A stretch of DNA of 64,000 nt from Bigelowiella natans CCMP2755 (Eukaryota > Protista > Cercozoa), in the NCBI GenBank assembly GCA_000320545.1, contig ADNK01001130.1, positions 92,830 to 156,829 of the forward strand, given 5' to 3'. The notes beneath the pieces were generated by a model that did not search any database, was not told the origin of the DNA, and saw nothing but the letters and a program-made list of their open reading frames with translations. Shown piece after piece: positions 150 to 64,000 of the stretch. The first letter of the stretch is position 1. Every line of letters starts with the position of its first letter. The position numbers and the translations under genes are program-made.

Positions 150-642
150 CTCAAATTCTCCTTCTGCCTTGTAAGAACCCCCTTCGCACAGAAACTAGTC
201 ATGAATGAGAGGGTCATTCAATGATGATGATGATAAGGATGATAATGACGATGACAACGAATATGATTAGACAATGAGTAATAATTTTATGTTCTCGGTG
301 GTGAGAGAAGTTCCCTCACCATATCCTTTTTCTTCGTCTCCTTCTCCTCCTCCTCCTCCTCCTTTTGGTCGTTGTTAGCCTCCTTTTCTGGCAGACGTGC
401 GGATTCCTGTGGGGAAACCATCGGAGTGGCTGGAGGTAGTGAACCCTGTGTTGGGGGAGCAGCAGCTGCTGCTTTAAGAGTCGGCTGCTGGGCTGTTGTT
501 GTTTTTTTATAACAACTGAAAGCAGGGCCTGCTTTAGGCTTCGTCTTTCTGACTGTGATTGGCTTGTTCTTGCTCTTCTTTATTTTCCTCCAACATTGGA
601 CGCTGCAACTATAACAAGCCAAAGCACGCATAAGGACAAACA

Positions 643-684
<42 letters not shown>

Positions 685-1303
685 CGCAAAGAAAGAAATG
701 AAGAAAGAAAGAAAGAAAGGGGCTAAATTCTTACTATGGCTGTGGCTTTGTGTAAGCTGGGTTTCCTTTCCCACACCAGGAACAAGTGAGAGCTGCTGTC
801 GTCGTTGCTGTCCTTGAACTGTTGCAGACTCCTGTCGTTCTCGGTTGTGTCTCCTTCAAATCTGCACTTCCAGGCGTTGGCGTTTGTTTCTGTTTGGTTA
901 TCACCTTCTTAGTCGTAGGTGCTGTAATCGGTGCGTCCTTATCTATCTTCTGTGGGGTGGGAGTGGGTTTGGTGCCTACAGGAGCTGTCTTTGGAGGTAG
1001 TGAACCCTGTGCATTAGGCGTGGGTGCTGCAACCGTTGCCTTATCGGCTGCGTCCATATGCGGTTTCTTCTTTTCCAACGCTGCATCAGTTTTCACAACG
1101 TTATCGTGTGCTGTTGTGGTTGTGGCCTTTGTCGGGGTTTTCACTCCATCTTCATGTGTTTTTGGTTCCCCTTCATTAATTGAATTCTCTGGTGTGAATG
1201 TCAGCGGATCGTCTGCCCAGCATGGGATTTCTTCGTTTACTTGCGTTGAGGTAGGATTTCGTATATTATTATCCATATTTGCGTCAGGAGATTGGTCCTC
1301 CAT
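150..1303 (-). CDS. Hypothetical low-complexity (P/T/K/A-rich) protein with a CxxC...YCSxxC zinc-binding motif; 3' end probably runs off the window
   Basis: ATG at 1303. A phase-2 GT-AG intron (~732-609) joins CSWCGKGNPAYTKPQP to YCSVQCWRK, a MYND/TRASH-like Cys pattern. QGSLPP occurs twice in the protein. A further phase-0 exon FLCEGGSYKAEGEFE ends at a GT donor near 150. Confidence 0.55.
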
Positions 1304-1846
1304 GATTCTTCCTCTTTATCGGAACCGCAAACAAAGAAAAAATAGATGATAATTTGGATAATCTGTTTGACGCAATACAGGAATCAAGGCCATTTTAGGT
1401 TTCGTTTACCTCTCAACATCAACCAAATCCAGGTGGATGGTAACGAGGAACGAAATTCTTCCTTCAAGGGGATGATGAAACTGTCCGACGTGTCCGAATA
1501 TGTGTCCGAAGATTTTTTGTCTCTTTTCTTGAATCAATTATTTCTTTTCTAATTTTTTAATTTTTTCCATGTGTTCGACATCTTGTGAATGGAAATACTC
1601 GAGCAAAACAACCAATACAACAATTATAACCGATTTTTTAAATTTTTTATTGGATCACCTGCGCAAGGTGCGTGCAGTCCAGGAGATTTTGTGCTTTTTA
1701 ACAGAATAATTGGATGTCGTATGCATGTAATAAAGGTTTTGGTTTCAGAAGAGCTACTAGTACCGGGATTGAGCTGCCTTCCTTCCTCACCCCTCTTCCA
1801 TCCCCCATAGGCTTACACCATCCAAGAGCCGTCGCGTTTCGTCACC

Positions 1847-3414
1847 ATGTCTGATGATCGTGCAGCAACAATTGCTACGTACAGGAAGAAATTTCTTGAA
1901 CACCGTGAGCTGGAGATCCAAGTCAAAAATCGTAAGACTTCCTAACGATCATTACAGCCAGCATGCACATCCTTACAATTGTCACATCTGTTTCAGTACG
2001 CTTGAAGATGAGAGACTTAAATCGTCAATATGAAAAGACAGAAGATGATCTAAAAGCGGTGCAGAACGTGGGGCAGATTATCGGAGAAGTGCTGAAGCAG
2101 CTTGATGAAGAAAGATGTAATACAAAATTCCAACATAATTCTTTTTCTTATCTTAACGTCATGTTCATCTGCAGTTATCGTGAAAGCATCTAGTGGTCCC
2201 AGGTATGTAGTTGGATGCAGAAACAAAATTGCAAAATCAAAGCTCAAGGCTGGATGTAGGGTCGCATTGGACATGACCACACTCACAATCATGAGAATCT
2301 TGCCTCGTGAGGTTGATCCTATGGTGTACAATATGTTGAACGAGTCGCCTGGAACAATCACGTACGCTGATATTGGGGGAGTGAGTGAACAAATTCGGGA
2401 GCTTCGTGAAGTCATAGAGTTACCTCTCACAAATCCCGAATTGTTTCTCCGAGTTGGTATTAAGCCTCCCAAGGGTGTCCTACTATACGGCCCCCCTGGT
2501 ACAGGGAAGACACTTCTCGCGCGTGCTCTAGCAAATAATATCGAAGCCAAGTTCCTGAAGGTTGTTGCAAGTGCGATAGTGGACAAATACATCGGAGAAA
2601 GTGCACGGATCATTAGAGAGATGTTTGGTAAGACCATCTTCCTGTTTTGCGCCAGAAATCTCCTTGAAACCCTGTCATCTATTCAGGTTACGCTCGAGAT
2701 CATGAACCCTGTGTCATTTTTATGGATGAAGTGGATGCCATTGGTGGTCGCCGTTTTTCGGAAGGAACTAGTGCTGATCGAGAAATTCAAAGAACTCTAA
2801 TGGAAGTAATATGAAGATAGTGGGATCACAAATTCCGTTTTAACTTTCTCTTTTTGCATCAGCTCCTTAACCAGCTCGATGGATTTGAAGTCCTTGGGAA
2901 AGTCAAGATGATTATGGCTACTAATCGTCCCGATACACTCGATCCTGCCCTATTAAGGCCGGGACGACTTGATCGAAAGATAGAAATCCCACTCCCAAAC
3001 GAAAACGCACGTCAGGAAATCCTGAAGATTCACGCTTCGAAAATAAATAAAAGCGGAGACATAGGTAACTATCCTATTGTGAATTTCAAGGATATTCACA
3101 AGTGAAGTTTGTTTCAGACACTACGTGTCATTTAAATGCCAAGTCTAAATAATTTCATTTTCAGATTATGAAGCAGTAGTAAAACTCACGGACAACTTCA
3201 ACGGAGCAGATCTTCGAAACGTTTGTACAGAAGCAGGTTTGCTATGCTACTTCCTTATTTATTTCCTACACTAAAACTAAAAGTTTACCTTACAGGCATG
3301 TTCGCAATACGAGCAACTCGAGAATATGTGGTAGAAGAGGACTTTATGAAAGCAGCACGCAAAATTGCAGCTGTGAAGAAACTCGAGGGAAAGCTTGAAT
3401 ACTCAAAAGTATAA
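1847..3414 (+). CDS. RPT4: 26S proteasome regulatory AAA-ATPase subunit RPT4 (PSMC6/10B)
   Basis: Spliced reading [23 protein letters not shown]...[20 protein letters not shown]...[12 protein letters not shown]...[18 protein letters not shown]...[36 protein letters not shown]...[14 protein letters not shown]...[12 protein letters not shown]. Short GT-AG introns. The diagnostic RPT4 motifs are intact. Confidence 0.97.
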
Positions 3415-3529
3415 TTACATCTGCAGAAACTGTTAGATTGTACACGATACAGATTTAGAAGTGTTCGAAGATTCAATATTAATATTCGACAAAATAACAA
3501 TATGGTAAATCTGTCGTCTGTAACCATAT

Positions 3530-4000
3530 CTAGCATATGCTAGCATGCTATGCAAGAATCTAGCTAGCTAGGAATCTAGAATGTCTGCATGACAATGTGC
3601 ACATCATTTTGTGTCATCGCGCAGTTCTAGAGTTGCTAGCTAGCGATGGAGCTCACCTTTGATACATGCTAGCATGGCATACCGCGCGGACATCCCGTTC
3701 TGCGGCTAGGCTAATAGGGCACAGCTGACAGTGCGTGCTAGCTAGCTAGGCTGCTAGGTGTGTATAATGATGATCATGATCGAAAGCCGCCGCGGCATGC
3801 ACATCATCAGCTCGATTGGGATCAAGCAAACACCTAGCTACCACGCTATAGGATGCAAACTCTTTGCCATTGTGTTCAAAATGAACGAAGGTGTAGCACA
3901 TGTGTTCGATCAGTTCACATGCAAGTGCATGGTGCTGAATGAAATTCTATGCTTAACCTTGCTTGCATCACCTCGTGCGTGAGAGCTTACGCTATGATCT
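3530..4000. repeat. Palindrome-rich (CTAG/CATG/TGCA/GCTAGC) block in the RPT4/kinase convergent gap
   Basis: CTAGCATATGCTAG, CTAGCTAGCTAG (twice) and CATGCTAGCATG (3665-3676); roughly 15 CTAG in about 500 bp, counted by eye. Confidence 0.8.
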
Positions 4001-4026
4001 TTCGCAAAATATAGAGGGGACTCGAA

Positions 4027-6278
4027 TCAAATTGAGTGGGATGGAGGCGGCTGCTGAATGTTGAGCTGCTGCACTTGTTCCTCCATCTCTCGAAAATTGT
4101 TAGCTAGAACGCTGTCGCGAAGTTCATCATCACGCACTTCTACATCTTCACGAGAATCCGAAGTCCCACTTTAGGTACACAACAATCATAGAAACATTTT
4201 CAGCACTAGACTGTCGATTTCAATGCGTAGTGTGGAATGTCATGCAAATTAATATTTCCTATGGATATTAGCTATACGCTGTCAATCCTGATCGGACGGT
4301 GTCGAAAGCCGAAGTGTTCATAGTTCTGTCATCATCACTCTGGGTATAACAAACACAAAAGTGATGACATTGAAACGAGATAGAATTCCTCCCTGCTATT
4401 CTTACAAAATCATCCTCGTCTTCGTCTTCGTCAGATTGCTTTGCCTCCCGCAGCAACTCAATGTCAGGTAAACATTTCTTGACTAGAGATGCAAGAATCT
4501 GAAACAAAATCCAAAATTTCCAAACGTTTCAAACTCCATGACTGTGTGCCGTTCATTAACTTAGACAACTGAGGCATTGAAACCCAACATTCGAGGATCT
4601 CTTCATCTTTAAAATATGGATGTTGAAAGATCATTGCACCTCTTTTCCGGAAGCGTTTTTAATAAATGGGTGCTGCAACATGTCGCTTGCAGAGGGTCGT
4701 ATCTGGTTCGAGGGATAGAATCAGAATCACACACATTACAGAATAAATAGTCAATGTTCAAAATGTGGAACCTTATAATCCTTAATTAAGCATTTCGCAA
4801 GGAAATCGACAAATTCTGTAGGCCATATTTTAGGGTTCTGTGAAAAAAAAAAGATGAATGAATGTTGGAAAGATTAAAACTTGTGGAAAAAATACATAAC
4901 AACCTTCAGAGTTGGGGGCGGTTGTTGAGGAATGAGGAATAAAGCTCGCATAGGATGTGCATGAGCAAGGGGAGGCCTACCGTCCGCACACTCTGAATAT
5001 GATCGTGTGTGTGACCGTGTGAAATCCCGGACAATTATGTCAAGTTACCGATGCAAGTAATTCCCAGTGACCAAATATCAGCAGTGTAATTGTAGCCAGA
5101 ATGAGTGCGTTTTTTTGAATCCACAACCTAAAATAATGTGTACAAAAGTTTTGTGGAGGCGAGGATGAGGGGAAATCATTAATGAGCACTGACCTCTGGA
5201 GCCATCCAGTATGGTGTGCCGATCAGTGTTCGTGTTTTTGCAAGAGTGTTATCCAATCTCTTCGATACCCCAAAGTCTGCTAGCTTACATTCCCCTTTCT
5301 CTGTGAGGAGTAAATTTGCTGCCTGTTGTGATGCCAATGGCAAACATTCATGCTTTTGATTGTGAAATGTAATGTGAAGGTAACCTTGACATCTCTATGG
5401 ATAATCTTTTTCTTGTGTAGATATTCCAGTCCAAGGAGTGCATGTTTCGCACAAACCGCAATTTCTTTCCATGTCAAGGTTAGTTGACAAATTTCCATCA
5501 TGTCCATCACACTTCCACCAGCACAGTACCTATAGAATTTATGAGCTCATAACAAGTCTTCAATAGTCGGTAATCTAAAAAATGTACTCCATTGCAATCC
5601 AAAAGTGGCCATCGTACACAAAACTCGCTATGTAAGCCTAAAACATAATTGCTTCATCAAAACTGTATTGCAAGTATATTGACAGTCAAAAATGATGTAC
5701 AGTGAGATAGTCGGACTTGCAGCCAGATAAGATCTGTAATTCTGCGAGAAGGTCTTTGTAGTCATCCTTTACAATTGGTTGAGTATCAAATAACCGTTTA
5801 TCAATAGATCTACATTTTTGTTCACCTTCGATATATCCATGATTTTTATAGCACATTCTTTGCCGTCCTTTTTCGAAGTTGCTTTCACAACGATCCCCTA
5901 GCCATACGAGAATTCTCAAACTTAGTTGAATGTCTATGGATAAGAAAAACACGAATTCGTTTAATGTTCAATGCTCAATGTTCTCACATATGCCCCTTTT
6001 CCAAGTTTTTCTCCAGTCATCTCAAAATAATTTTCTGGATTGCCAAATGCATCCGGCCTTTCTGCTGATGGCTTCAACCTATCATCCTTTTCATTGTTAG
6101 TACTGGGAGCACCTTTTTTCAAGGAACTATTCTTCTTTGATGTGTTAATGGATCCTCCATCCCCTTCTTTGCGCTGTTCTTGCTTTTCCGACTGTGATTC
6201 AGGAGAAACACCAATTTCCCCTCGAGACTGCGAAGCTACTTTATTCTCTGCCTCTTGTTTATCCGTGGTCTTGTCCAT
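4027..6278 (-). CDS. STE20/GCK-family (MST/Krs-like) Ser/Thr protein kinase
   Basis: Exons give [19 protein letters not shown]...[35 protein letters not shown]...[45 protein letters not shown] and [13 protein letters not shown]. An acidic tail ends PPPSHSI* at 4027. Start taken at MDKTT (6278). Confidence 0.9.
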
Positions 6279-6596
6279 CGTTGTGGAAGAGTCAATGCGT
6301 AAAACTTCGTTTGCACGAAGGGGGGTGGCGTGAAAATAATTTCGAAGTGCCGCCAACCAGCAAAAAACACATCCCATTCCTTTTATGCGTCAAGAGGATA
6401 TCGTTGACGCAGAAAGGCAGTCTCAATTTTCGTTTTCTCACAGATGGTGCTGCGTCTATTTTATCACTTCAGGAAAGAAACGTAGGCAAATTTTCTCAAA
6501 AATATCATTGAACAGGTGCACAAAACTGGAAAAACCAAACTGTGAAGACTTCTTGCGACGATTTTGCCCTGCGACAAACTTATGATTCAAACGATA
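6279..6596. promoter_or_regulatory. Putative bidirectional promoter (kinase / SEC6), 318 bp
   Basis: Head-to-head start codons at 6278 and 6597; inferred from geometry only. Confidence 0.5.
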
Positions 6597-9500
6597 ATGG
6601 CGGATGATGAACGCGATGATGACATTCGGATAGTTGAGGAGCTCGCATTGCTACTCGCAAGTAAAAACTATGTTCATCCACCGAAAAAATTCAGTTCAAT
6701 GCTCCTCGTCGTATTTACTGTTTAATGCTTATCGTTAGCTCCTGACCAACTTGAAAATCTCCCCCAGTACAAATCTCAATTTAGAGAAAAAATGGAGGTT
6801 CGAAACGAGATGTTACTGTTGTTATCGCATGTATCGAATAATTGTGTTGTACAGATCTCGGCTTCCAGCCTCCAAGGAACCTATGAAAGTTTTTTGGCGA
6901 ATCGCATGTATTGCTTGTGGAACTTGGCGTTCATAATTTTATCGCACGCAATTGCTTGATTGATTGATTGTGACATTATGACAGAATTGCTTATGAACTA
7001 ATGCCACGGACCAAGAAGCTTGTACGGCTTATTAACCACGATCTTACAAAGCTGTCTAAAGAATCTTCTCAGTGTTCAGCCCTCTTTAAGAATCGAGCTC
7101 ATCAAGAAATTGTATTGTCCACAACTGTGTCACTATATCATTTATTGATAGGTTTTATTATTAGATCAATAGAATAAAAATCGTACGCAAGAACTTCCGG
7201 CGCGTTGAAATTCTTCAAAGAGAAGTCTCGGCAGTACCAGCAAAATTAAAGGCTGTACGTACAATATCTTTGCTCGATCGAATCATCAGGCGATAAAACC
7301 TTGGTCCGCAGGTAGAGGATATATTGGCTAGGATGGAAGGAGAACGTGTTCCCCTGCACGACAGAAAAATTAAAGTGAAAGACCTCTGCCATCACATAAA
7401 ATGATTGACAGATAACACTAATAAGTACGTTCTTTGCAGGATGCATATCTAGACCTCAGGAGCTTAGTAGTATTAAGAAATAAAATCTGGAAGGAAGGCC
7501 CAAAAACTTCGTCGGACGAATTTGCACAATTCAAAGATGATATGCGATCTACATTTGGCAAGATTGATGATGTGATGTTTCTATATTACATAAAATTGCC
7601 TTCCATTAAATATTTATTGGCAACTTAGGCGGCAAGTCAACTAGAGAATGTTGTCCTCGAAAATGTAGAAGACGGGCTAGACCTTTGTAGAGCGGTAAAC
7701 TCCAACTTTCAATACACAGTAAATGTTAAAGACACGCGTTAAATAATTGTCTTAGGATCCAACCACTCTGATCTACTCCATCGTAGTTATAGAAATGGAG
7801 GTAGTGGGAAAGGAATAACATTGAAATATGATAAAGAAAATTTGATAATGTGATAACTACTTCTCAGGACCGAGCAAAAAATAAAGTCTTCACTTGCAAC
7901 CCAATGCACGAAATTGGGAATTCTGGAAGCGGCTCCGAAGATATTAAAATGCGCTTGAAAGCACTTAACAGAGTAAACTAATAGTATCTGGATTATATAC
8001 TTTTATCTCATTATCGAATCTGTGGGCAGATCGAAGAGTCAATTGTCGAAACCTTTTATCAAGTCCTACAGGGGGATCCGAACAGGCTTACTGGACAATT
8101 AGTACCAGAGACTGGATCTACTCCAGACAAACGAAGCCGTCCCGTTTCGAAGCTTGGAAATGAAAATTTTACTGAGAACTCTGGATTAAGCGCCTTCAAA
8201 GCCCAATCTATAGATCAGGTTAAGGCTACGGGTGTATTTGATTAAATTATTTAAAGGCATGATAGCGGCTGGAATTGTATATTTCTCGCCATTATTCAGG
8301 TATTGGCCTCTCTAGATAAACTTGTTGACGATCTCTATTTGGTGAAAGATGAAGTCTGTCCTTTATATCCATCCGATTACAACATACTCTCGGTCTATGT
8401 GCATCGGTAGATAGATTTTCACGTCAATAACTGTTATTTATTGAAAGTCAATGCAATGTTATGTAGGTATATAAAATATCTAAATGCAGATCTGTCCAGT
8501 AGACTATCCCATCCAGAAAAGCTGTCACAATCTGGTAAAATGATAATAACCTTTTTGCCGTTTGTAGATTGTAGATTTCATTTATTTTTAACAGACTTGT
8601 TGAGATGGTCATCTTGGATACAACGCTTTCGACAGCATGTAAAGACGCTAGGATTCGATCTACCAGGTGCCGTAATGCCATGTGATCACCACCATTGCGT
8701 AGCTGATAAAGCTGTTTTTGTACCATAGAGGAGCTTCAAGATTTGATACTCAAACTTGCTGGAGTTTATAAGGTTGAACGCCTACGTCTTTTTATAACTT
8801 AAAAAATGTGTAAATAAGTAATTTTAGATGAAATCATACGAACATCTCCTGTTACCTATCAACAACATTTTGGAAACTGAAAGGGAAGAAGAACCGGTAG
8901 AAACAGTTGATTGTTCGTTGATTCTGATTTGAGTTATAGTTTATGCATAGGTGGAAGATAAGAATGGATATCCTAGAATGAGAGGCCCGCGGGATCTTTT
9001 TGGAATCCTTCATAATGTACAAGATTTCTGAACATAAGAAAAGTACTAACTAATTTCATTTTATGTTTAGCATTGGGATAATGTACTTGCACAAAGCATG
9101 GGAGAAAAAATGAACTCTAAGGTCTTCACCATCCTTGAGATATCATCATGCAACGTTCCTCAAATTTAATTTTAGAAGTTTAAGATTATTTCGATTTAGG
9201 CAATCCTCGAGGTAGCAAAAACTTATGCAGGGACTCTCATATACGTTCAAAGAAATCATGTGAGATTTTGGGTATGTGAAGATGAAACTGAATATCCTTG
9301 TAGAAACTGACCTTGCAAAAACTGATTTCAAATTATTAACTTAGAAAACTCTGGTCTACAATGAAATCAAGGTTTGAAAAGTGACATCAAATACATTTTT
9401 GAACGGCAAGTGTTATTATTTCAATCCAGAATGACAAGGAACCTGAATTACATATTGTGGTTGATGGAAAACCCAAAACCGAGCAACATGTTGCAGCCTG

Positions 9501-11770
9501 GATAAATGTAAATAAGAAAGATCTTAGATTCCAGTAAATCATTTACTCATCATCACTCTAATTGAAATGATAGAGTTCTATTCGATATCAAGAATTAACT
9601 GCCCAGCTAACTAAAAGAATCCAGGAACATGTTCAAAGGTTAATCATCATGTCAATGTTGTAGGGCTTTCAGAATCTATTTTGCTAGGTGTCTTGAGGTC
9701 GAATTCGGTGAGATAACGCCGGTTCATCAAGAAAATTTTGTGAGGAAGGTTCAAGAGGCCCGATGGAGTAGCCGTAAAATAGTTTAATTGATGCTAAAGT
9801 AGCTGCAAGTAGTTCCAGCATTGGAAGAAGTATGAGGTCATCCAATGGCCTTAGCACAGAGGAGATCGAATCTATTAAATCACGAAAGGATGTAAGCATC
9901 TCTCTTCACTCCGTGATGTCCTTGGTAAATATATACATTTATTCAGTATCCTCAAGATCTTTTTCACCTGATGATGTCATTTGATAACACCAAAAGGCCG
10001 AGAAAGGCTTTCAAAGAGTAACAGATTCTGCTGTCAATGGCCTCGCAGTAAGATTTATTTTTTAATGTAGATAATACTCATAACTGAACGTAACCCTAGG
10101 GATTTGTGGTTTCAATTTGCAAAGAAGAGTTCAAATCTCTATTTTCACCTAGTTGGTTGAAGATTGTAAGCCAGGAGAATTGCCAGAAGCCAACAGCCAC
10201 TTTGAACATAGAAAGTGCCTTAGAACCTCCGCAACTTCTTCAACTCCAGCTATCGAATTGCGCTGTGGCAGCAACGCCAACTTCGGAATCTGGTAGCATT
10301 CCCTTTTTTAAGGAAGAAATTCCTGCAGTCGTACAAATTGCTCAGGTGAAGCCGTGGTTTAATGTGATGAAATGTGTCTCAATGATCTGATACTTAAATT
10401 CCTTTACAGGAGCTCCAACTTGCTATGGTCGATTATGCAGCGTTGGTATAGAAATTTATTCAATTGTTGAAATAAACATTTAGTAATCTATCTAAAGAGT
10501 TTCAATGCTCCAGATATCTGACGAAAAAGTTCAGTCCCAGCTCGCCGAACGACTAGTGATGAGAACTTTGAAAACATATTTTTCTCAGGTGATAAAGTAT
10601 TTTGGCTTAAGTAGAGAGTTCTGATTGTAAACGATTATGACAGTTTGCAGCATCAAAGCGAAGACTCACAGACGATCAAAGAACGGTTTTTTAATTTCGA
10701 AGTTCAGAAAATGTATGATGGTCTGAAAAGTTGAATTTTCGAAGAAATTTGGCTCTGGAATTTCTGCAGATTTAGATGCAATGAAGTCTCGATTAAAGGT
10801 ATTTACTGCTTTAAAAATTCTCAATTTTCTCCTTCCAACCGTACAATTTCTATAGGATCCTTCGGGGATTGAGAACAACAAAGCAGAAGTCTACGCGTAA
10901 GTAAATCATATGCAACAAATTAATATCTAATTATCTCACAAAATTAGGTTTGAGGACAGTATGTTAAACAATTGTTTCGACAAGTTTATGTTTGTTTCGG
11001 ATTTTCTTAATGAGCAAGATCCAGAAAAAGCAGCCGTTGCTTTAACAAATGTATATCTAAAGTTAATACAAACCATTAAGGTATAGTCCTTTATTCAATT
11101 ACGCCATACTTCTGACCAATACAGGCACTGGGAACAATAATTACGGAATTCAACGCACATGAAGGACTAAACTTCGTTACGGGGATGTCGAAGCTACGGC
11201 CAGATCTAAGTGCACAATGGAAGCTGCTTCTGCAACAGGTAGGATGTCCTCAGCGGTGGAGCTTCTTCTTAAATGATTTAGCATCCATTGATCTCTGAAT
11301 AAGCTAATTTTAAGATCACAATTTTTATCAAAGGAGTTCCAGTATCGACTTTCCAATCATGAAGAGGAAACTGAGGTAATATCTACAACTTCTGTATAAA
11401 GATTGTTCATTTTGTAAAGTTTATCCTATCCCACAAGGGTAAATCAGTTGACACAATAGCACAGAGGCTGCGACTGCCCTGGGCGTCCTTGAGCAATGGT
11501 TCTCCTTCCATTGAAAGTGACGTCTCCAGTTCATGGCTTTCGAACTTTGGAGTCACCGTAACGCGCTCCGAGACAGAAGCTACTTCTCATGACCCTCATG
11601 TAGAGTCAAAAATATCCCAAAACGCACCTCCACCTTCTGTGAAGCCAGATGATGATACAAAAGAACAATCAGCTGCTACAGCAGTGAAAAAGACGTCACA
11701 TGTTAGATCCAACACCATGGACACTGACATTGACGCAGAAATAATATCTCTGGATGATTTTCTTTCGTGA
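6597..11770 (+). CDS. SEC6: Exocyst complex component SEC6/EXOC3, many short exons
   Basis: Exon fragments match Sec6 in order: IVEELALLLATPDQLENLPQYK, DPTTLIYSIVVIEME, LVDDLYLVKDEVCPLYPSDYNIL (cf. plant YDYVAPCFPPRYEIF), GPRDLFGILHN, EEFKSLFSPSWL. It has a low-complexity C-terminal exon. Not every exon junction was resolved. Confidence 0.75.
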
Positions 11771-11919
11771 TCGACAAAGATATCACAGCAGCTCTCAACA
11801 GTCCATGGTTTAAGTTCTGATCATGAATGTGTAAAAAATAAAAGCAATGAGCCAGTTATTGAGCATCGAATGAATCATGACACAGCTCAACTATTACAAT
11901 TCTCTTGTTCACAGAATGG

Positions 11920-15136: not shown

Positions 15137-15169
15137 GTTAACTAGACCAATGATGACTACCGCTAAACA

Positions 15170-49947: not shown

Positions 49948-52900
49948 TCATACTGCAGAGAGTGAGAGCATTGATTGCATCTGTCTGAAGGAGGTTTCAA
50001 TCTTTTCAAAAAGCCTTTAAAAACAACAGTATTAGATTTGTGTTTTAAATATGTTTTGATGGACACTTACTTTTGATTTTGAGGATGAGTCGGCCGAACA
50101 CTTTCAAGGAAGGCATTAAGTCCGAGTGGTTGCAACCCCCTCTCAGCGCAGAACTAATCAAATTTTACGGCAGCCAGAGAAAGTTGTGGAAATTATAGCC
50201 ATGAAACCGCTACAAAATACAGTTTGCGCGACTTTAAAAAAAAACCTATTCGATTACAAATTGAACAAAAGAGACGTGTTGCGAGAATTTAGGGCCGTTA
50301 GCTGAATTCCTAGTTGACCTTTATGAGTAGAACGAGGCTAATACAGCAGACGATTAAATTGCTCATCTTCGAAGGCATTCCACTGGAGGATTTGGCCGAA
50401 AGACTCCCCGTAGACACGAGCCTATCTCGAAGACTCTGCATGATCTCTCTAATAATTGGTAGTGGCAACAACAACAGGCAGTGGTGGTGCAACCAATGTT
50501 TTTCTTTTTACATGTTTTACTATCGAAAGAGTGTAACAGCATCTAGGTTCGTCGTCGTCGTCATCATCGTTGTCATTGTCATGGTTATCCCTCCCATTCT
50601 AATTACTACCGTGCTCTTTGATAGCAGAGTTGGGAGACATGGACAGAGAGGTCCGAACCGGCTTCTCCAAGGGAAATGCCAGATTGCCGAAGCCGCATTG
50701 CCTGTAGTGTGATTATAATAGCTCAATCATCTTTTATGAGATACCCACGCAGCAGTTTCGCAGGAGGTAATAACACAAACAACCTGCAAAGCATTGTCGA
50801 GGTCTCGGCTTGCCTTTTCTAGTTCCACAATGACCCATGCACACTGCTGCTTGAATGCTGGCGGTATAGCAACTACTGGAGGGGGAGGCAGAGGCGTAGA
50901 TGCAGCTGCGGAGTCCGACGATGATGAGGAAATGGCAGCCTTAGTAATGCTCTTTAATTCATTGTTGTTTTTATTTTTGGCAGTTCTATAAGTCCCACCA
51001 TTTTGCAATGCGGGGCTGCTGCTGCTGCTAGTCGTTGTCATATGAGGGGTAGAGGCGGCTGCTCCTTCGAACTGCTGTTGTTTTTTCTGATCTCTTTCCT
51101 TTTTGACTGTCGTTGTTTTCGCGGATACTACTTTTGCTTTAGCCTTAGCCTCTGCCTCGTTTTGCATTGATTCCGCCTTATGAGTTGAAAGATGATGTGA
51201 GAGGAAAAGGAGGAAGAAGGAGGAAGGGGAAGGAGGACAGACGAGCAACTGCACACCTACATGTTTCTCACTGCCTATGTGTCTAGGTCGCCTGAACCTC
51301 CTCTCCCCCTCTATCTTTAAATGCATGTGTGTAAGTGTGTGCTACGGAGATAAGTTCTGCAACGTACGCATAATGCTAGTAAACGTTTATTTCTTCCCCC
51401 CTGCCCAAGCTAGTAGCAGTTCCTTCTCAAATTACCAAGTCATTCATCGTACGAAGATGTGTAAGAAGAGCTTCCTTTCGGTCAAGAAGTCTTAGAAGAT
51501 TAGCCACCATATGAGCATCACCATGAGCATGAGGAAACCGAGGTCCGACTGGGTGTTGAAGCTGCGAAAGGGAAGAGTGCAGATGGCCATAGGGCATGAC
51601 TTTGGTGTCAGAGACCAAGACGCCGCTGCCAAGACCTTCTTGATCGAAAGCAATCTGATATGCGTAGGGGTCTCCCCCCCCAACCGAACCTTGTTGATCC
51701 GCTTGACCACCACGTTGGGAAGAGAAGGAAGAGGAGGAGGAGGAGGTGGTGGTAGTCGAGGGGGAGGATCTTGGCGGCTTCGGCATGACAACTCCAGTGT
51801 GAAGTTCTCCGGTGGAAGGATGGACTGCTACTACAGTCTGACCGTCAACCAGACGTGCAGGGACCTCCTCAGGGAAAGGAAATTCATCACAGACAACTGT
51901 CAGGCCTTGTTGTATACACCTCACATCGTCCCGATATCGCTCTAGTTTCTTTCTCTCCTCACGGAAGAATGCTGCCGACATACGCCTAAAGATAAATTAT
52001 TAATCGACAAGGAAAATGTCTTCAATAAATTTGAGATAAAAGAAGAGGGGGAAATTAAAAACGAAATCTTTACGATACTGTCAATGGTTATTCGCTCTGA
52101 AATTAAAACAAAGTCCTCATATATATTGCAACAGGTCATTGTCTATACTCTGCAGAACGCAGAGTATAGAGGACCTCAAGGCGTTGCTTGGTCATTTTTT
52201 CTCATCATTGCGAGTTGTTCACTTAACGACGACAGATCTCGAGAAAGAATCTCAAATTTCCTTTTTTTGACAATCGTATTACCACCACCAATAGCATGCA
52301 TAAGGTCCATCTATCCTCCTCCTCTTCCTCCTCCCCTTTCTGTCGCATCATGACATAAAGATAACTACTACTAAGACTACTTTATTACCTGGGTTTTCCG
52401 ATTATCGATCTAACGTAGCTCCACTCTGTTCTCGTTATTTGCTTGATGTTCCCCATCCCATACTCGTACAAGCACTCCATGAAATCGTTTTGCGCAAAGT
52501 ACAAACGATCGATTGCCGAGACAAAAAACTCACAACGGCACCATGACCTGAACTTCTTCGATTTCAAAGCTACGGTGAGCTGGCGTAGGCATTCCTCGCT
52601 CTTCGGGCTGGGTATGATCGCTGGTTAAATACACGCAAATGAAGTGGCAGTAAAGATGATGATGATGATGATGATAATTATCGTGAAGACGACGAAAAAT
52701 ATGATCAAATTACCTTGCATAGCGCTGGAATCAAAGGTATTTCTAAAGCGCACTTTCATCTGAGAGGTATCTATCTTTCCAGTTTCAGCAATAAGCTGCT
52801 TTCGCTGCTGTTTGGAATCTATCCGAGTAGTCGTCGTCTTTGACTGTTGAGGAGGGGTTGACGTTGTTGCACCTGCTGTAGAATTTGTTGAAGACGACAA

Positions 52901-54863
52901 CCGAGAACCTACGAGAACGATGATCATACCAACGACGAAGGTGATGATGATGATGATGAGTGATGATGATGATAATGTAAGAAGAGATAATATACGTTAA
53001 ATTTCGTACAATACAACATTTTCGCTACTGTTCAGGAAGAAGTTGAATCATCAAGCAGAAAAAGGGAAACGGATTATTTGTGCATCCTAGATAGCGGAAA
53101 AACTATGCGTATTCGTGTGCGTGTTTGTGTGTGTGTCGAGCGAGATGGGAATACCTCTCTTTCGCTTTCGTATTGCTGAGGTTGTTCGCTTTGTCGTTCC
53201 TCCTCCTCCGCCTTTACCTGCTGCTCCACCACCTGCGTCATCACCACCCGCTCGTTTCCTCTCTGCGGCAGCTTTTTGCCTTTCTGCTGCCGTTGTTCTC
53301 TTTTTCTTCTTGCCTTTTTCTGATGCTGTACGCTTCGAATGCGATCGTTTGGCAGTTGAAGAGTCTGCAGCCGTGCGTTTCTCCGATGTTGCACTCGATC
53401 GCTTTTCAACAGCGCCTGTACGGGCGCTGCTGCTACTACCACGTTTCTTTTGTTTGTCTGAGGCTGCTGAACGTCTATCGTTCGCTTGGCGTTTCTTACT
53501 GGCGATTTCTCTGCTGCTGCTGCGGTTGCTACGACCGCGAGGAACTACTCGTTTACCTGGTTCAATATCGAGAACAAACGCTTAACACGCATTTATAACA
53601 ACGTAATGAGTGTATGGTGTTCGACATTCTGTCACGAGCATTGATCTCTAGCCCAGAGAGGAAGAGGGCAGGGGGGTATGGTACGAAGTAATCCATTATG
53701 GCATGTAGTATCCTTGCGCTGTTATATGACAACAACAACGTGACAACTACCTTTCCCTTCAATGGCACTAAAAAGAGAATCCAATGCAGAATTGTCTCCT
53801 CTGAAAATTTGACAAATAGAGGAAACGAATGTTAGTTACTTAGTGATGAAATGTTTAGTATTTTCTAACGAGGGAGTGCAACTGCTATCAAAAGAACTCA
53901 GGTGCTTCACCTCGTTACTCCTTTAGTCCTGGCCTTCTTTTTCGATGGGGGGGGATGATCTTTGACTCTTTTCCTTCCTCCTTTCTCAGATTCCCGCCCT
54001 TGAGTACCGACATCTTCAGGTTCCGTTGCTGAATCTTCATCATTGCCACTGACATAGGGGGGGGGGGAGAGAATGAGATGAGTGTAATCCCAAAAATACA
54101 TAATACATTTCTGCTTTATATTAATATTTGTGTGCACGGCTATTAGTTCGCACTCTTCTTCTGTTTCCGGTCCTCCGTCATCAGAATCGTTATGATGTGT
54201 TTTCTCGGCTTCTTCAATACTCCGTCGCGATCTTCTCACTGTGCGTCCAGAGCGAGTGACCGTTTGAATAGCCCCAGATGTTGCGGAAGCAGCTGCAACA
54301 CTTGCAGTTCTAGAACGTTTTCTTGGTCTCTTCTGGTTTTGTGGTTGGGGTTTCTTCTCTGCAGCCGGCTTTCTCTTTCTAAGAGAGCGTGACTTGCTAG
54401 AACTCGAAGAACTACTAATTTTCGGAGGGGGCGGCTTGGTATCCGTTTTAAGAGCTGCTTTCTGAAGATTACATGACAATTATCAATCACTCAAAGATGA
54501 GGGAAAATTAAATGAATCTCAAATATCAATATTCCGTACGGTGGATGATGCTATCTCCGCCATTTTGCTCAACGAAGCTAGAGCTGAGAGTTCCTGTGTA
54601 TGTTGGAAGGAAAAATAAGAATAACAAGCTGAAGCAATAGTAAGACAAAATCTCTCCACCTCCAGGTTCTCCGACGCCTGAAAATATACCGAATATTTCA
54701 GGCGCGATCACATATGGGAAAATGCGGCGATAATAGATTTTACCCTTAAGAGCGGAGTAAGCATCGGGGAGGTCTTCTCGTCCTTATCCTAATGTATAAA
54801 AAGTCATTGGAGAAGTCCGAAGGAGAATTTTCGGGTGGAGACCTCAATATTGCGCTGCTCCAT
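49948..54863 (-). CDS. LIN9: LIN9 / ALWAYS EARLY (DREAM/MuvB complex subunit) with DIRP domain
   Basis: DIRP domain KFRSWCRCEFFVSAIDRLYFAQNDF...QITRTEWSYVRSIIGKPR. Tudor-like GQTVVAVHPSTGELHTGVV...YQIAFDQEGLG...VSDTKVM. C-terminal LIVCCISLVLLIK|FCAERGL...SVRPTHPQNQKLFEKIE. The 5' exons join in phase 0 from ATG 54863. Confidence 0.88.
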
Positions 54864-55157
54864 GATTAATTGTGAAGTCCTGGAAGCCAACTGCTTCGTC
54901 CACGCCTTATCTTCTCTAACCCTCGCGCGTCCTCGGACTCGAGTTTAGTCGTAATTAGTTCCTATGTTAGAGGATGCACGTTAGCAATCAGTGTGCATTG
55001 TCGCTGTTTTGTTTTCTTTGAAAGCATCTAATTCATTTGAACGCAGACATTGCGCTGCTGGGGAACATCGTGACAGATAACCTGCACCTCCCGTTTCGCT
55101 TTAAACTATCAGGACTCATAGTACGTAGATAAAAGAAAGTGCGAAAGCTTCAAATTG

Positions 55158-55328
55158 GTGCTCGCTCATCTCATAGATAACATGGGACGGGGGGAATTAG
55201 GAGCGCGGACCCACCTCCTAATTGTTAAAGCGTCGGGCCTGGTTTTGAAGGCCTGACAGCGAGCACGGACTACGAAAATGAGAGTAAATGCCCTCTATTT
55301 ACGCCTAACGTCAACACCAGATACTCTC
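55158..55328. ncRNA. Candidate structured element (multibranch fold) between LIN9 and the hypothetical gene; identity unknown
   Basis: Nested complementary pairs: 55158-66/55258-66 (9 bp), 55186-89/55231-34, 55195-203/55215-23 (9 bp), 55236-40/55249-53, and 55280-86/55322-28. Confidence 0.3.
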
Positions 55329-55412
55329 TGTGGATATTTAACAGCAGGTACATTATTTACACACCAACCACTTTTTGGGTTATTTAGATTACGATTTTAG
55401 AGCCCGTTTGAA

Positions 55413-57107: not shown

Positions 57108-57239
57108 ATTGCTTAACCTGAGATAGCTCACTCCCCTGACTGGGTAATGAAGGGAGGAATCTTGCATGTCATTTCACTTCAGAATGTCCATCTAGACATA
57201 CTCATGCAAGAAGGCGTGAAAGATGAAAAACTGGGGTAT

Positions 57240-57660
57240 GCTCCATGCTAGCATGGTCTGCGGCATGCACAGGGGCTTGTACAAGCAGCAGCTGCACGCA
57301 AGCAACATCACGCAGTGCATGAGTAACAATGTAACGATGCGCGAGTCTCTACCTCATCATTGCTTGCGGACACGCGATCGTTGACCGCTGACCTTGCTTT
57401 CTACGTGCCGACGCGTTGCGTTGCACGAGTATACAAATGAAGAAATGCACAGCTACATAAGGATGACCCAATGCAATATTGAACAAATTTAATTGATTAA
57501 TTACATTCGTCTTAGCTACATAAGGATGGCTATTGAACACATTTAATTGATTAGTTACATCCGTCTTACAAACGAATATACGAAGAATAATAGACACAGG
57601 TCTATCATAAGACTGTCGCTTTACTGCGCATCTCAACGCAACGCTATTGCGAACTTATAA
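57240..57660. repeat. Palindrome-rich block with a tandem ~60-bp unit in the hypothetical/hydrolase convergent gap
   Basis: CCATGCTAGCATGG (57243-57256). Two tandem AGCTACATAAGGATG...ATTTAATTGATTA.TTACAT.CGTC units are homologous to the 49.4-kb block on the opposite strand. Confidence 0.8.
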
Positions 57661-57993
57661 TATTGTCATACATGTGCATCAGGGCGGTGCACAAATACTT
57701 CCATGGTACAACTAATTAGGATAGTCTATAAGTAATTTAATGATGCAAGGATACCTATTATTATAGCCGTAAAGACCCCAAGCAAACACGTGGAACAACA
57801 GCTTGTTGGAAGGCACCTTCATTCAATTATGCGAAAAAAAAATTACAACTTGCCTTAAGTCATGACAAATCTTGGTGCTTGAAATTGGTTATCAACATAC
57901 CACATACATCCATATGCTCCCGTTGGAATATCTTCGTCCTATCAAACAACATGATTTGTACATATAGCCTTTGCATACAAAGTTATCATCGTT

Positions 57994-58029
<36 letters not shown>

Positions 58030-58151
58030 ATATATCTAATCTTAAAACATTTCATTTTGTATCTGCGTGTTTTCGCGCTCAGGTCATGTACATCTGATTT
58101 CGAATTACAAACACTATCATTTGTGAGAGTCGGTTTAATTCTATAAGATAG

Positions 58152-58863
58152 CTAGATGTAGCGAGAGTGTGACGGCATGCATGCAGCAGATGCTACCGAT
58201 ACGAATTTATCGATCAAATCCACCATGTAGGAGTCATAAGAAGGGCCTAAATTGATATATAGCAGCCATTTTCAGCAACAATGATTTCACCATCGGGATT
58301 GGACACAATGCAGCAAGCAACTCCTGCATTCATGTTACCTTCCATCTCGAAGTGACCGACGCCAGGAATTGTATGTGTCTTACGAGGCCCGCACATCATG
58401 CACCAGCAGCTATGTAGATGACAGATGATGGATGATGCGATAGTGAGAGGAGCATGCATTTGATCATGAATAGCAATTTGGCCATGATAATGCTGTTTAT
58501 GCATCTGGGGCCCCTATCGATTCATAAAAAAGTTGATACTGAAAGACGACACTATTTCGGAACAAAAACAATAATTTGTAGAGAGTCACTACAGAGCACC
58601 GTTCATTCATTCTTTCAGAGGAAATAGGAGGGCTATTCATATTTCTATCTATAACATCTACCATAAGTATTCGCAGACGCTTGTAAACATGTCGCAGGAA
58701 CCGTTGATAAATAGCCGGCGTTTGTTCGAGCACAAGACTCTGCACGCAAGGTTATTGGAAGGAATCGAAGGTGTCAGGATTAGAACAAAAGGAAGGGAAA
58801 TAACCCACCTATATATCACTAGCAAAATAGAGAAGAAGGCGAGAAAAAGACGCCAGTGGAAAG

Positions 58864-62617: not shown

Positions 62618-62650
<33 letters not shown>

Positions 62651-62930
62651 TATCATCGTCATTATCATCATTATTATCATTATCATTTAGTTTCAAGACG
62701 CCATGAAGGTCCAAGCTACTGGACTTCTAAAAAAAGCATATAAAGCTTTCCAACGAATCGCAACGGTTGCATGATGATGCACTGTATCCTCCATCCCCCC
62801 CCCCCCCCCCTTCTCTCCTCCTCTTTCCATGGAGGTAGCACATTTTCTGTATATTCTTCTTCACTATTCATTCATTCAAATCCATCAAGAACTTACTCGT
62901 TATCACACATTGTGTTCTCTCTGTTACTTC

Positions 62931-62961
<31 letters not shown>

Positions 62962-63050
62962 CTTCATATATTTCCAGACCGCTGCGAAGTATGCCGCTCA
63001 CGATGATCCAGTTGGACAATACTTGTAATAGTAATAGTATAAAAATCGTA

Positions 63051-63145
<95 letters not shown>

Positions 63146-63747
63146 TCATTTATATGTATAATAGTAGTAAGTGAGCGGAGCTCATGGGGGGGGAGGGTTG
63201 TGACATACTGCAGCATTTATCGTCTATGAAGTAAGTAGTAGTGGTGGTGGTAGAAGTAACAGAGAGAACACCATCTTCTTCTTTTACTCACTGCTAGTAC
63301 TATGGATGATTCTCTTCTTCCTTCTCCTCCTCCTCCTCTTCCTCCTCCATATTTAAAAAATATTATGATACAATAGGTTTGGACTGTCGCAAGAATCAAT
63401 GGCAACGATTCACATCCACAACAATATGTAAGTAGTCATGCTACCACTGCTACTAATATAGTAGTAGTAGCAGTTGTAGTAGTAGCTTCTTTTCTCTCGA
63501 TTGCTGTCTTTCCTCTTCTTCTTCTTCTTCTTCTTCTTCTCCTTCCTCTCTTCGTCCTCACACACGGCAGACAAAACAACAACAACAACAACAACAACAC
63601 CTAGGTACAAAGAGGCCAAGAAGTGCTTAACACGTTTCGAGGAAGAAGCGGTGCTACCTATTCTAACACTAAGATATCATAGAAGAGAGGAGAGAATAAG
63701 ACTTGTGTGTGTGATATGCTTATATTGTATTAATCCAATGCATATGC

Positions 63748-63835
<88 letters not shown>

Positions 63836-64000
63836 TCATTTATATGTATAATAGTAGTAAGTGAGCGGAGCTCATGGGGGGGGAGGGTTGTGACATACTG
63901 CAGCATTTATCGTCTATGAAGTAAGTAGTAGTGGTGGTGGTAGAAGTAACAGAGAGAACACCATCTTCTTCTTTTACTCACTGCTAGTACTATGGATGAT
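60900..64000 (+). CDS. Hypothetical protein, partial: ubiquitin-like-fold segment followed by TPR-like helices (inferred)
   Basis: Phase-consistent exons LKLYVHYMDPETPKCSFTL...TKT|VGDLRKEFIEAYNDRF...DG|KFVMNDSRLLAVVFENMDDVF, then DAMKVQATGLLKKAYKAFQRIAT and RYKEAKKCLTRFEEEA. The start and several junctions are unresolved; it runs off the window. Confidence 0.45.
63058..64000 (+). repeat. Exact direct repeat of at least 253 bp at 690-bp spacing (63058-63310 and 63748-64000)
   Basis: Identical sequence, including (TA)n and (TG)n tract lengths; the second copy is cut by the window end. Confidence 0.95.

What the first reader, a model, noticed from the sequence alone, without database searches (positions are those of the whole stretch)
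150..64000. Sixteen consecutive genes in strictly alternating orientation
Seen: strand order -,+,-,+... with no tandem neighbours, giving eight head-to-head pairs with gaps of about 0.2-0.9 kb. With independent orientation, 15 consecutive switches has probability (1/2)^15, about 3e-5. Inference: the genome may be built from divergent two-gene modules, each a shared promoter flanked by palindromic 3' junctions. Caveat: three gene models (14.5 kb, 55.4 kb and 60.9 kb) are low confidence.
Basis: partly seen in the sequence, partly recalled or inferred. Interest (0 to 1): 0.8.

Follow-up and report, generated by a model that had tools for sequence, protein, structure and literature searches.

The report
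Alternating gene strands in Bigelowiella natans
In this stretch of the alga Bigelowiella natans almost every gene points the opposite way from its neighbours, so gene starts and gene ends lie in separate spacers; a related marine microbe shows the same layout, and the bias looks much stronger than the one known in brown algae.

Summary
The window is nuclear DNA of Bigelowiella natans: one exon is 100% identical to an MMETSP transcript, and one ORF clusters with JGI Bigna1 model 87741.

From 0.15 to 57.3 kb I find 14 strand blocks in strict alternation. Nine have homology, Pfam or spliced-transcript support. Four rest on an out-of-sample gene-finder strand call. One, at 14.5 kb, rests only on a 249-codon ORF ending in a CaaX box.

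Merging same-strand exons produces alternation by construction. The honest test is whether each block holds one gene: 7-10 blocks do, and 3-4 places could hide a tandem gene. That gives 13/13 to 13/17 switches.

The 3' junction claim holds. Of 60 GCTAGC/TAGCTA hexamers, 45 lie in 8 kb of convergent gaps (P about 3e-28).

The best independent support comes from an intron-poor marine MAG with the closest TOR (68% identity) and FANCD2. Its two contigs show 19-20 consecutive strand switches between different Pfam families, with different gene partners. Three comparator contigs show 17 switches of 30.

So there is a real, probably lineage-wide architecture, but no evidence for conserved two-gene modules. 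First readers flagged the same pattern in at least five other windows of this genome. Genome-wide numbers were not obtainable here.

The parts
287..1303 (-). g1, P/T-rich ORF (737-1303, possibly continuing to about 290 across a (GT)n tract)
   Evidence: 189-codon ATG ORF. Gene finder out of sample: '-' 42.1 vs '+' 2.3. No Pfam hit.
1304..2007 (.). divergent spacer g1 / Rpt4 (704 nt ATG to ATG)
   Evidence: CTAG 1, palindromic hexamers 17/kb.
2008..3411 (+). 26S proteasome ATPase Rpt4 (PSMC6), at least 5 short introns
   Evidence: 97% identity to an Amorphochlora EukProt protein; hits named Rpt4/S10B. tblastn exon map. Pfam AAA.
3412..4270 (.). convergent spacer with CTAG/CATG palindrome island (3530-4269)
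   Evidence: 18 CTAG; 27 GCTAGC-type words; palindromes CTAGCATATGCTAG, CTAGCTAGCTAG, CATGCTAGCATG.
4271..6278 (-). Ser/Thr protein kinase (STE20-like by eye)
   Evidence: Pfam Pkinase on '-' in two exons, E 5e-8 and 4e-10. Gene finder '-' 29 vs 0.
6582..11770 (+). g4, intron-rich gene(s) of unknown function; one gene or two tandem '+' genes not resolved
   Evidence: Gene finder out of sample '+' 66.9 vs '-' 0. Many canonical 44-66 nt GT..AG introns. Purine skew '+' throughout. No Pfam hit.
11771..12146 (.). convergent spacer; the palindrome island (11933-12411) overlaps the predicted end of the next gene
   Evidence: 19 GCTAGC-type words; GCATGCTAGCATGC, GCTAGCATGCTAGC.
12147..13718 (-). small gene, GNAT-like by eye only
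   Evidence: Gene finder out of sample '-' 41 vs 0. No Pfam hit.
   Evidence: 249-codon open frame; 0/2000 shuffles reach it. Only CaaX-ending ORF of 530. Island starts 101 nt after its stop. No gene-finder, Pfam, PDB or AF2 support.
15137..16046 (.). convergent spacer with CTAG island (15237-15899)
   Evidence: 14 CTAG and 14 GCTAGC-type words.
16047..30373 (-). TOR kinase, at least 24 exons, one gene fills the block
   Evidence: tblastn of the 2498-aa MAG TOR covers residues 1-2498 from 30155 down to 16050. 1931 homologues of the 614-aa exon.
31251..33580 (+). ABC-F ATPase; transcript contig L006 spans exactly this unit (CDS 31266-33485)
   Evidence: Exon 100% identical to MMETSP protein P0295. 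L006 is colinear at 99.87%. Pfam ABC_tran.
33581..35942 (.). long convergent spacer, CATG-rich near ABCF, content unresolved (small ORFs 34136-34554 on both strands)
   Evidence: 14 CATG, 6 CTAG. Gene finder at most 4.4 on either strand.
35943..42244 (-). Na+/H+ exchanger with cyclic-nucleotide-binding domain; ORF X (35946-36608) is either its tail or a separate tandem '-' gene
   Evidence: Pfam Na_H_Exchanger in three exons. cNMP_binding is cut at profile position 61/89 at the ORF end at 38158. A CNBD-like exon lies at 37673-37731. X scores '-' 57.9.
42583..43643 (+). g10 = JGI Bigna1 model 87741 (209 aa, coiled-coil; CDS 42610-43533)
   Evidence: ORF 43038-43244 is in the collection and clusters with EukProt Bigelowiella_natans P003598. 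tblastn. Transcript contig L013 lacks two introns that are GT..AG on '+'.
43947..47987 (-). FANCD2, with one in-frame 57-nt intron near 47303-47359
   Evidence: 40% identity over 99% of the query to P0001; Pfam FancD2. Single tblastn HSP 47966-43959. Intron read.
48323..49082 (+). GNAT acetyltransferase
   Evidence: Pfam Acetyltransf_1, E 1.8e-5, in ORF 48708-49079. Gene finder '+' 12 vs 0.
49083..50726 (.). convergent spacer with CTAG island (49159-49337, CTAG-rich to about 50.0 kb)
   Evidence: 19 CTAG; 17 GCTAGC-type words.
50727..55353 (-). LIN9-like gene (DIRP domain); the 5' half (53-55.3 kb) is basic and low-complexity, and whether it is one gene is not proven
   Evidence: Pfam DIRP split over two exons, E 1e-11 and 8e-11. 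Gene finder '-' 100 vs 2.
   Evidence: Gene finder out of sample '+' 36.7 vs 0; 6 exons. Purine skew '+'. No Pfam hit.
57108..58246 (.). spacer with the highest palindromic-hexamer density (CCATGCTAGCATGG, GCTTGTACAAGC, GCATGC)
   Evidence: 56.9 palindromic hexamers per kb; sequence.
   Evidence: Gene-finder scores at most 19 on either strand, below the antisense noise of about 40. No Pfam hit. ORF 61826-62386 is made largely of microsatellites.

Best explanation
The nuclear genome of Bigelowiella natans, and that of at least one related uncultured marine eukaryote, is laid out so that neighbouring genes almost always lie on opposite strands.

Shown here:
- Intergenic spacers fall into two classes. 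Divergent spacers (0.3-1.1 kb ATG to ATG) hold both 5' ends. Convergent spacers (0.3-2.4 kb) hold both 3' ends.
- In B. natans the convergent spacers carry strand-symmetric (palindromic) CTAG/CATG/TGTACA word islands. These begin about 70-165 nt after the '+'-strand stop codons; on the '-' side the spacing ranges from about 2 to 127 nt. That is close to where the two known transcript contigs end.
- Gene partners differ between B. natans and its relative.

Inferred mechanism:
- In a compact genome a tandem junction must fit a terminator and a promoter in series, and it exposes the downstream promoter to read-through.
- Alternation avoids this. One spacer can serve two genes, as a two-way promoter region or a two-way termination/polyadenylation zone.
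- The layout would be kept by selection while genes are reshuffled. Only rearrangements whose two breakpoints fall in the same class of spacer preserve it, which would explain why the rule is conserved and the partners are not.
For: Organism.

Alternation in the window:
- 14 blocks alternate.
- Seven blocks are filled by one full-length gene: Rpt4, kinase, TOR, ABCF, g10, FANCD2 and GNAT.
- From NHE to LIN9, five verified genes alternate across spacers of 0.3-1.65 kb that leave no room for another gene.

Two spacer classes:
- 45 of 60 GCTAGC/TAGCTA hexamers lie in 12.6% of the window, all in convergent gaps (P=2.6e-28).
- All twelve 12-14 nt CTAG/CATG palindromes are in convergent gaps.
- The first palindromic word lies 71-163 nt after the stop for six of the seven '+' genes.
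- Transcript contigs end 95 and 110 nt after the stop.

Relative (MAG KOPF15-1 / GCA_977009605.1; TOR 68% identity against about 50% for the next hit; FANCD2 39%):
- Contig 2416 reads p450+ GST-like- SRP72+ CCDC22- DEP+ PCMT- TOR+ 179aa- 223aa+ PeptC1- FANCE+.
- Contig 2606 reads PeptC13+ CLEC16A- FUT8-like+ DEAD/HA2- VPS9+ CCDC15-like- EthD+ L36e- FANCD2+ Nop-.
- That is 19/19 switches (P=2e-6).
- Its convergent gaps have GC 0.34-0.47 (one 0.55); its divergent gaps have GC 0.50-0.63.

Other contigs:
- L001, from another organism (FANCD2 40% identity), shows 7/8 switches.
- The same gene caller on three other marine eukaryote contigs gives 9/14, 6/11 and 2/5.
- Partners are not syntenic.
- First-reader notes report the same pattern in other windows of this genome.
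Against: - No genome-wide count could be made. The Bigna1 annotation and strand-specific RNA data were out of reach.
- Alternation of blocks is partly tautological in an intron-rich genome.
- g6 has no homologue, no transcript and no gene-finder score.
- g4, NHE/ORF X, the LIN9 5' half and the 33.5-35.9 kb gap could each hide a tandem gene.
- 58-64 kb is unresolved.
- The MAG sample is only about 47 kb. One 116-aa '-' ORF there, if real, would break the run, and one called ORF proved to be an antisense artefact.
- Contigs L007 and L008, whose ABCF and Rpt4 are the next closest to B. natans, do contain tandem genes.
- CTAG islands are absent from the MAG, and three of seven B. natans convergent gaps lack strong ones (33.5-35.9 kb, 43.5-43.9 kb, 57.1-58.2 kb). 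They are therefore not the cause of alternation.
- Every functional step (two-way promoter, two-way terminator, selection against tandem junctions) is inference.
Confidence: 0.5

Rival explanations
1. B. natans has only a moderate bias, as in brown algae (about 60-70% opposite-strand neighbours). This window is a lucky run, lengthened because same-strand neighbours were read as one gene.
For: - The known precedent is Ectocarpales at more than 60%.
- 13/17 is the pessimistic count here.
- The scan covered very many windows, so long runs will be picked out.
- L007 and L008 show tandem genes in organisms with fairly similar ABCF and Rpt4.
Against: - At q=0.65, 13 switches in a row has P about 0.004.
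- At least five other windows of the same genome were independently flagged.
- The closest relative shows 19-20 of 19-21 switches with ORF-defined genes.
- All checkable blocks are single genes.
Confidence: 0.3
2. Chance plus artefact: orientation is random genome-wide, and the pattern comes from weak or merged gene models.
For: - Two of the 16 reader models fail and one (g6) is weak.
- Merging makes alternation automatic.
- (1/2)^15 ignores the number of windows scanned.
Against: - Seven to ten verified single-gene blocks give P of 0.008 to 0.001.
- The two spacer classes differ sharply in sequence (P about 3e-28), which is not expected if the junction types were misassigned.
- The MAG result is independent of intron modelling.
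Confidence: 0.08
3. One reading: the genome is built of conserved, co-regulated two-gene modules, each a functional pair sharing one promoter.
For: Seven head-to-head pairs with 0.3-1.1 kb between start codons. Transcript 5' ends lie 15 and 27 nt upstream of the ATG.
Against: - The partners have no evident functional link (TOR/ABCF, FANCD2/GNAT, NHE/coiled-coil protein).
- The partners of TOR and FANCD2 are different genes in the MAG and in L001.
- Co-expression was not tested.
Confidence: 0.1

Closest known systems
Excess of adjacent genes on opposite strands in Ectocarpus and other brown algae (Cock et al. 2010; Phaeoexplorer preprint 10.1101/2024.02.19.579948)
   Same: An intron-rich algal nuclear genome in which neighbours tend to alternate and divergent spacers are short.
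   Different: Brown algae reach 'greater than 60%' alternating pairs. Here the window gives 76-100% and the related MAG about 95-100%. The lineage is different (Rhizaria). The palindrome-word islands at convergent junctions are not described there.
Bidirectional (head-to-head) promoter gene pairs of compact eukaryotic genomes
   Same: Divergent neighbours with about 1 kb or less between starts.
   Different: Those are a minority class among mostly random orientations. Here nearly every gene is in such a pair and also in a tail-to-tail pair. Shared promoter activity was not tested.
Strand-switch regions of kinetoplastid polycistronic units
   Same: Transcription starts confined to divergent switch regions and ends confined to convergent ones (my own knowledge).
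   Different: Kinetoplastid units hold tens of same-strand genes. Here each unit is a single spliced gene. No trans-splicing or base J evidence was sought.
UGUAA poly(A) signal of green algae such as Chlamydomonas (my own knowledge)
   Same: TGTAA or the palindrome TGTACA lies 28-224 nt after most stops here and is frequent in the MAG's convergent gaps. The ABCF transcript contig ends about 22 nt after a TGTAA inside the palindrome ATGTAATTACAT.
   Different: Not shown to be the signal in B. natans. It is absent within 260 nt after g6, g10, the kinase and FANCD2.

Membership tests
Bidirectional-promoter (head-to-head) gene pair | Two adjacent genes on opposite strands, transcribed away from each other | tested here: met
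   Seven divergent junctions between supported genes.
Bidirectional-promoter (head-to-head) gene pair | Transcription start sites no more than about 1 kb apart | tested here: inconclusive
   ATG-to-ATG distances are 303-1110 nt. Only two 5' transcript ends are known: ABCF 15 nt and g10 27 nt upstream of the ATG.
Bidirectional-promoter (head-to-head) gene pair | Shared regulatory region or co-expression | not testable with these tools
   No expression or chromatin data were reachable.
Genome-wide alternating-orientation bias (Ectocarpus type) | Proportion of opposite-strand adjacent pairs significantly above 0.5 over the whole annotation | not testable with these tools
   Window only: 13/13 to 13/17. 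The Bigna1 model P0354 is not on record in the contig index.
Genome-wide alternating-orientation bias (Ectocarpus type) | Divergent spacers shorter than tandem spacers | tested here: inconclusive
   No confirmed tandem junction in the window to compare with.
Kinetoplastid-type polycistronic units with strand-switch regions | Long runs of same-strand genes between switch regions | tested here: not met
   Blocks that can be checked hold one gene each, e.g. TOR fills 14 kb.
Two-way (strand-symmetric) terminator region between convergent genes | A sequence element reading alike on both strands, placed between two 3' ends | tested here: met
   Palindromic CTAG/CATG islands lie only in convergent gaps.
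Two-way (strand-symmetric) terminator region between convergent genes | Termination or polyadenylation activity in both directions | not testable with these tools
   Only two transcript 3' ends are known, 95 and 110 nt after the stop.

The most novel reading that the evidence does not exclude
Chlorarachniophytes and their uncultured relatives obey a near-obligate rule (over 85% of junctions) that neighbouring nuclear genes alternate in strand. It would be the most extreme case in any eukaryotic nuclear genome. Every spacer would be either a two-way promoter or a two-way terminator, the latter marked in B. natans by palindromic CTAG/CATG islands. The rule would survive extensive gene reshuffling because only rearrangements between spacers of the same class persist.
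Probability: 0.4. Interest if true: 0.8.

Novelty: new variant of a known kind. Interest (0 to 1): 0.6.

Why it matters
If near-strict alternation holds genome-wide, B. natans would be a natural test of how gene orientation, transcriptional interference, supercoiling and termination shape genome layout.

- The genome is public and the organism is cultured.
- A close relative, Amorphochlora, is transformable as far as I know (not checked here).
- The arrangement gives a simple grammar: promoter spacer, gene, terminator spacer, gene.
- That grammar would improve gene prediction in this intron-rich, weakly codon-biased genome.
- It would also supply compact two-way promoters and terminators for engineering.
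- Conservation of the rule without conservation of partners would constrain models of how such genomes rearrange.

Tried and rejected
1. Codon-usage and 3-periodic Markov coding scores give only about 0.1 bit per codon, too weak to call short exons.
2. The first self-trained gene finder merged neighbouring genes and predicted antisense 'genes' scoring up to 40. I replaced it with a model trained on verified genes only, with leave-one-out testing.
3. Homology-anchored intron extraction was noisy for TOR, whose introns run 90-980 nt with weak consensus.
4. Purine skew is only partly predictive; it is wrong for the TOR 5' half and the NHE membrane part.
5. Two scans of metagenome contigs with degenerate patterns covering several targets found nothing. 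The positive control from L006 was missed too, so that collection lacks the MMETSP assemblies and the blanks mean nothing.
6. Twenty exact-ORF look-ups found only g10. A further exact look-up for g6 failed.
7. The Bigna1 model P0354 is not in the contig index, so the official annotation could not be read.
8. Single-sequence AlphaFold2 of g6 gave pLDDT 40, and a PDB sequence search gave nothing.
9. Pfam found nothing in g1, g4, g6, g14 or any ORF of 58-62 kb.
10. A candidate promoter word RCGACAT has 7 of its 16 copies in divergent gaps. Its total count equals chance and the enrichment does not survive multiple testing.
11. Islands compared with one another share only 16-53 nt matches, so they are not copies of one mobile element.
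12. Literature searches found no statement on gene orientation in B. natans. The 2012 genome paper is not held, so prior mention cannot be excluded.
13. Rfam and tRNA scans found nothing.

Full report
**What the DNA is.** The window is intron-rich eukaryotic nuclear DNA, 43% GC and full of microsatellites, with no tRNA or Rfam hit.
- The last ABCF exon (32418-33485) is 100% identical to an MMETSP transcript protein and 89% identical to a Bigelowiella protein from MMETSP1359.
- A JGI MMETSP contig (L006) aligns colinearly with 31251-33580 at 99.87%.
- ORF 43038-43244 is in the protein collection. It clusters with EukProt Bigelowiella_natans P003598, which is JGI Bigna1 model 87741.
- The organism is therefore Bigelowiella natans, a chlorarachniophyte, or a very close strain.

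**Genes with direct support.**
- Rpt4(+) 2008-3411: 97% identical to an Amorphochlora protein, with the exon map from tblastn.
- Protein kinase(-) 4271-6278: Pfam Pkinase in two exons.
- TOR(-): the 2498-aa TOR of a marine MAG aligns from residue 1 at 30155 to residue 2498 at 16050, so one gene fills 14 kb.
- ABCF(+) 31266-33485.
- Na+/H+ exchanger(-): Pfam hits in exons at 39.5-41.3 kb. A cyclic-nucleotide-binding domain is cut at the ORF end at 38158 and continues in an exon at 37673-37731.
- g10(+) 42610-43533: Bigna1 model 87741. Transcript contig L013 lacks two introns whose ends are GT..AG on the '+' strand, which fixes the strand.
- FANCD2(-) 43947-47987: 40% identity over its length to two uncultured relatives, with one in-frame 57-nt intron.
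- GNAT acetyltransferase(+) 48323-49082.
- LIN9-like gene(-): a DIRP domain split over exons at 51.4-52.6 kb.

**Genes with indirect support.** Codon bias is very weak. I therefore wrote a small splice-aware gene finder and trained it only on the nine verified genes.
- Leave-one-out, it picked the right strand for all nine. The worst antisense total was 26, over the 14 kb of TOR.
- Out of sample it gave g1 '-' 42 vs 2, g4 (6.58-11.77 kb) '+' 67 vs 0, the 12.1-13.7 kb gene '-' 41 vs 0, and g14 (55.8-57.1 kb) '+' 37 vs 0.
- g6 does have a 249-codon open frame, and none of 2000 shuffles of the 2.3 kb spacer reaches that length.
- It is the only one of 530 ORFs of at least 50 codons in the window that ends in a CaaX box (CAII*).
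- A CTAG island begins 101 nt after its stop, within the range seen for most other '+' genes.
- I rate g6 at about 0.75.
58-64 kb gives scores of at most 19 on either strand and no Pfam hit. ORF 61826-62386 is largely microsatellite.

**Is it more than chance?** Fourteen blocks alternate, giving 13 switches. In an intron-rich genome, though, blocks alternate by construction once same-strand exons are merged. The fair question is whether each block holds one gene.
- Seven blocks do so demonstrably: Rpt4, kinase, TOR, ABCF, g10, FANCD2 and GNAT (P=0.008 under random orientation).
- Up to ten do if the small unverified blocks are counted (P=0.001).
- Four places could hide a tandem gene: g4, ORF X after the exchanger, the 5' half of LIN9, and the 33.5-35.9 kb gap.
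- The switch fraction therefore lies between 13/13 and 13/17.
- Because the scan covered many windows, this window alone would not carry the claim.

**Two classes of spacer.**
- Of 60 GCTAGC/TAGCTA hexamers, 45 lie in the 8.1 kb of convergent gaps (P=2.6e-28). Only one lies in divergent gaps.
- The main islands are at 3539-4269, 11933-12406, 15237-15899 and 49159-49337.
- All twelve perfect 12-14 nt palindromes built of CTAG and CATG units lie in convergent gaps. CATGCTAGCATG recurs at 3.67, 12.24, 12.33 and 57.25 kb.
- The islands share no long similarity, so they are not one mobile element.
- Three convergent gaps are weaker or of another type: 33.5-35.9, 43.5-43.9 and 57.1-58.2 kb.
- The two transcript contigs end 95 and 110 nt after the stop codon, near where the palindromic words begin.

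**Relatives.** The closest TOR (68% identity, next about 50%) and one of the two closest FANCD2 proteins (39%) come from an uncultured marine eukaryote (ENA KOPF15-1 assembly; NCBI MAG GCA_977009605.1). It has 60% GC and few introns, so genes are plain ORFs and the merging problem does not arise.
- Contig 2416 reads p450+, GST-like-, SRP72+, CCDC22-, DEP+, PCMT-, TOR+, 179aa-, 223aa+, peptidase C1-, FANCE+.
- Contig 2606 reads peptidase C13+, CLEC16A-, FUT8-like+, DEAD/HA2 helicase-, VPS9+, CCDC15-like-, EthD+, L36e-, FANCD2+, Nop-.
- I checked the calls. One '+' ORF is an antisense shadow of CLEC16A, whose FPL domain lies on the '-' strand. One 116-aa '-' ORF remains unexplained.
- That gives 19/19 switches (P=2e-6), or 20/21 if the 116-aa ORF is real.
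- Convergent gaps there are AT-rich (GC 0.34-0.47, one 0.55). Divergent gaps have GC 0.50-0.63. CTAG islands are absent.
- L001 (GCA_014466275.1, FANCD2 40% identity) shows 7/8 switches.
- The same gene caller on three other marine eukaryote contigs gives 9/14, 6/11 and 2/5, so it does not create alternation.
- The neighbours of TOR and FANCD2 differ between B. natans and the MAG.
- First readers reported strict alternation or junction-specific palindromes in other windows of this genome. Those notes are unchecked and open to the same merging bias.

**Reading.** Shown: alternation of supported genes, two spacer classes, recurrence in a relative, and no conservation of partners. Inferred: spacers act as two-way promoter regions and two-way 3'-end zones, and tandem junctions are selected against. 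Alternation would then survive reshuffling because only rearrangements with both breakpoints in the same spacer class preserve it. The CTAG/CATG islands look like a B. natans elaboration of the convergent spacer rather than the cause.

[quoted passage not shown] I found no statement for B. natans, but its 2012 genome paper is not in the library. I file this as a stronger variant of a known kind of bias, in another supergroup, with a new junction-specific sequence feature. The decisive test is a junction count on the public annotation, which could not be run here.

Noticed in passing
window 37673-42244 (-): The Na+/H+ exchanger carries a cyclic-nucleotide-binding domain after its membrane part, an architecture like the sperm-type SLC9C exchangers of animals. 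The domain is split by a roughly 430-nt intron that contains a (GT)n tract.
   Followed up: partly
window 14483-15136 (+): An orphan 217-aa ORF ends in CAII*, a CaaX prenylation box. It is the only such ending among 530 ORFs of the window. No homologue, domain or confident fold was found.
   Followed up: partly
window 33553-33580; 3' flanks of most genes; convergent gaps of L004 and L011: TGTAA, or the palindrome TGTACA, lies 28-224 nt after most stop codons. The ABCF transcript contig ends about 22 nt after a TGTAA that sits inside the palindrome ATGTAATTACAT. TGTAA is also frequent in the MAG's convergent gaps. It is a candidate poly(A) signal like that of green algae.
   Followed up: partly
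L006 (= window 31251-33580) and L013 (= window 42583-43643): The MMETSP transcript contigs of B. natans are unspliced (L006) or only partly spliced (L013: two introns removed, others kept). This fits heavy intron retention. It also means ORFs called on them equal genomic ORFs.
   Followed up: partly
window about 47303-47359 (-): FANCD2 has an in-frame 57-nt GT..AG intron holding a stop codon. The two long ORFs appear separated by a single stop, and tblastn aligns straight through it.
   Followed up: yes
window 1714, 14226, 30898, 31154, 42416, 48271, 55600: Seven of the 16 copies of RCGACAT lie in divergent spacers, which make up 7% of the window. The total count equals chance and the enrichment does not survive correction for the number of words tried.
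   Followed up: partly
window 63067-63143 and 63757-63833: The same compound microsatellite, (AT)23(TG)16.5, occurs twice about 690 nt apart with similar flanks, which suggests a local direct duplication.
   Followed up: no
L011 2397-5099: The collection's gene caller listed a 290-aa '+' ORF that is antisense to the N-terminal FPL-domain ORF (859 aa, '-') of CLEC16A. Called genes on GC-rich eukaryotic contigs need checking.
   Followed up: yes
L004 and L011, all intergenic gaps: In the 60%-GC MAG, convergent gaps are short (106-351 nt) and AT-rich (GC 0.34-0.47, one 0.55). Divergent gaps (84-740 nt) have GC 0.50-0.63. This is a clear compositional signature of junction type.
   Followed up: partly
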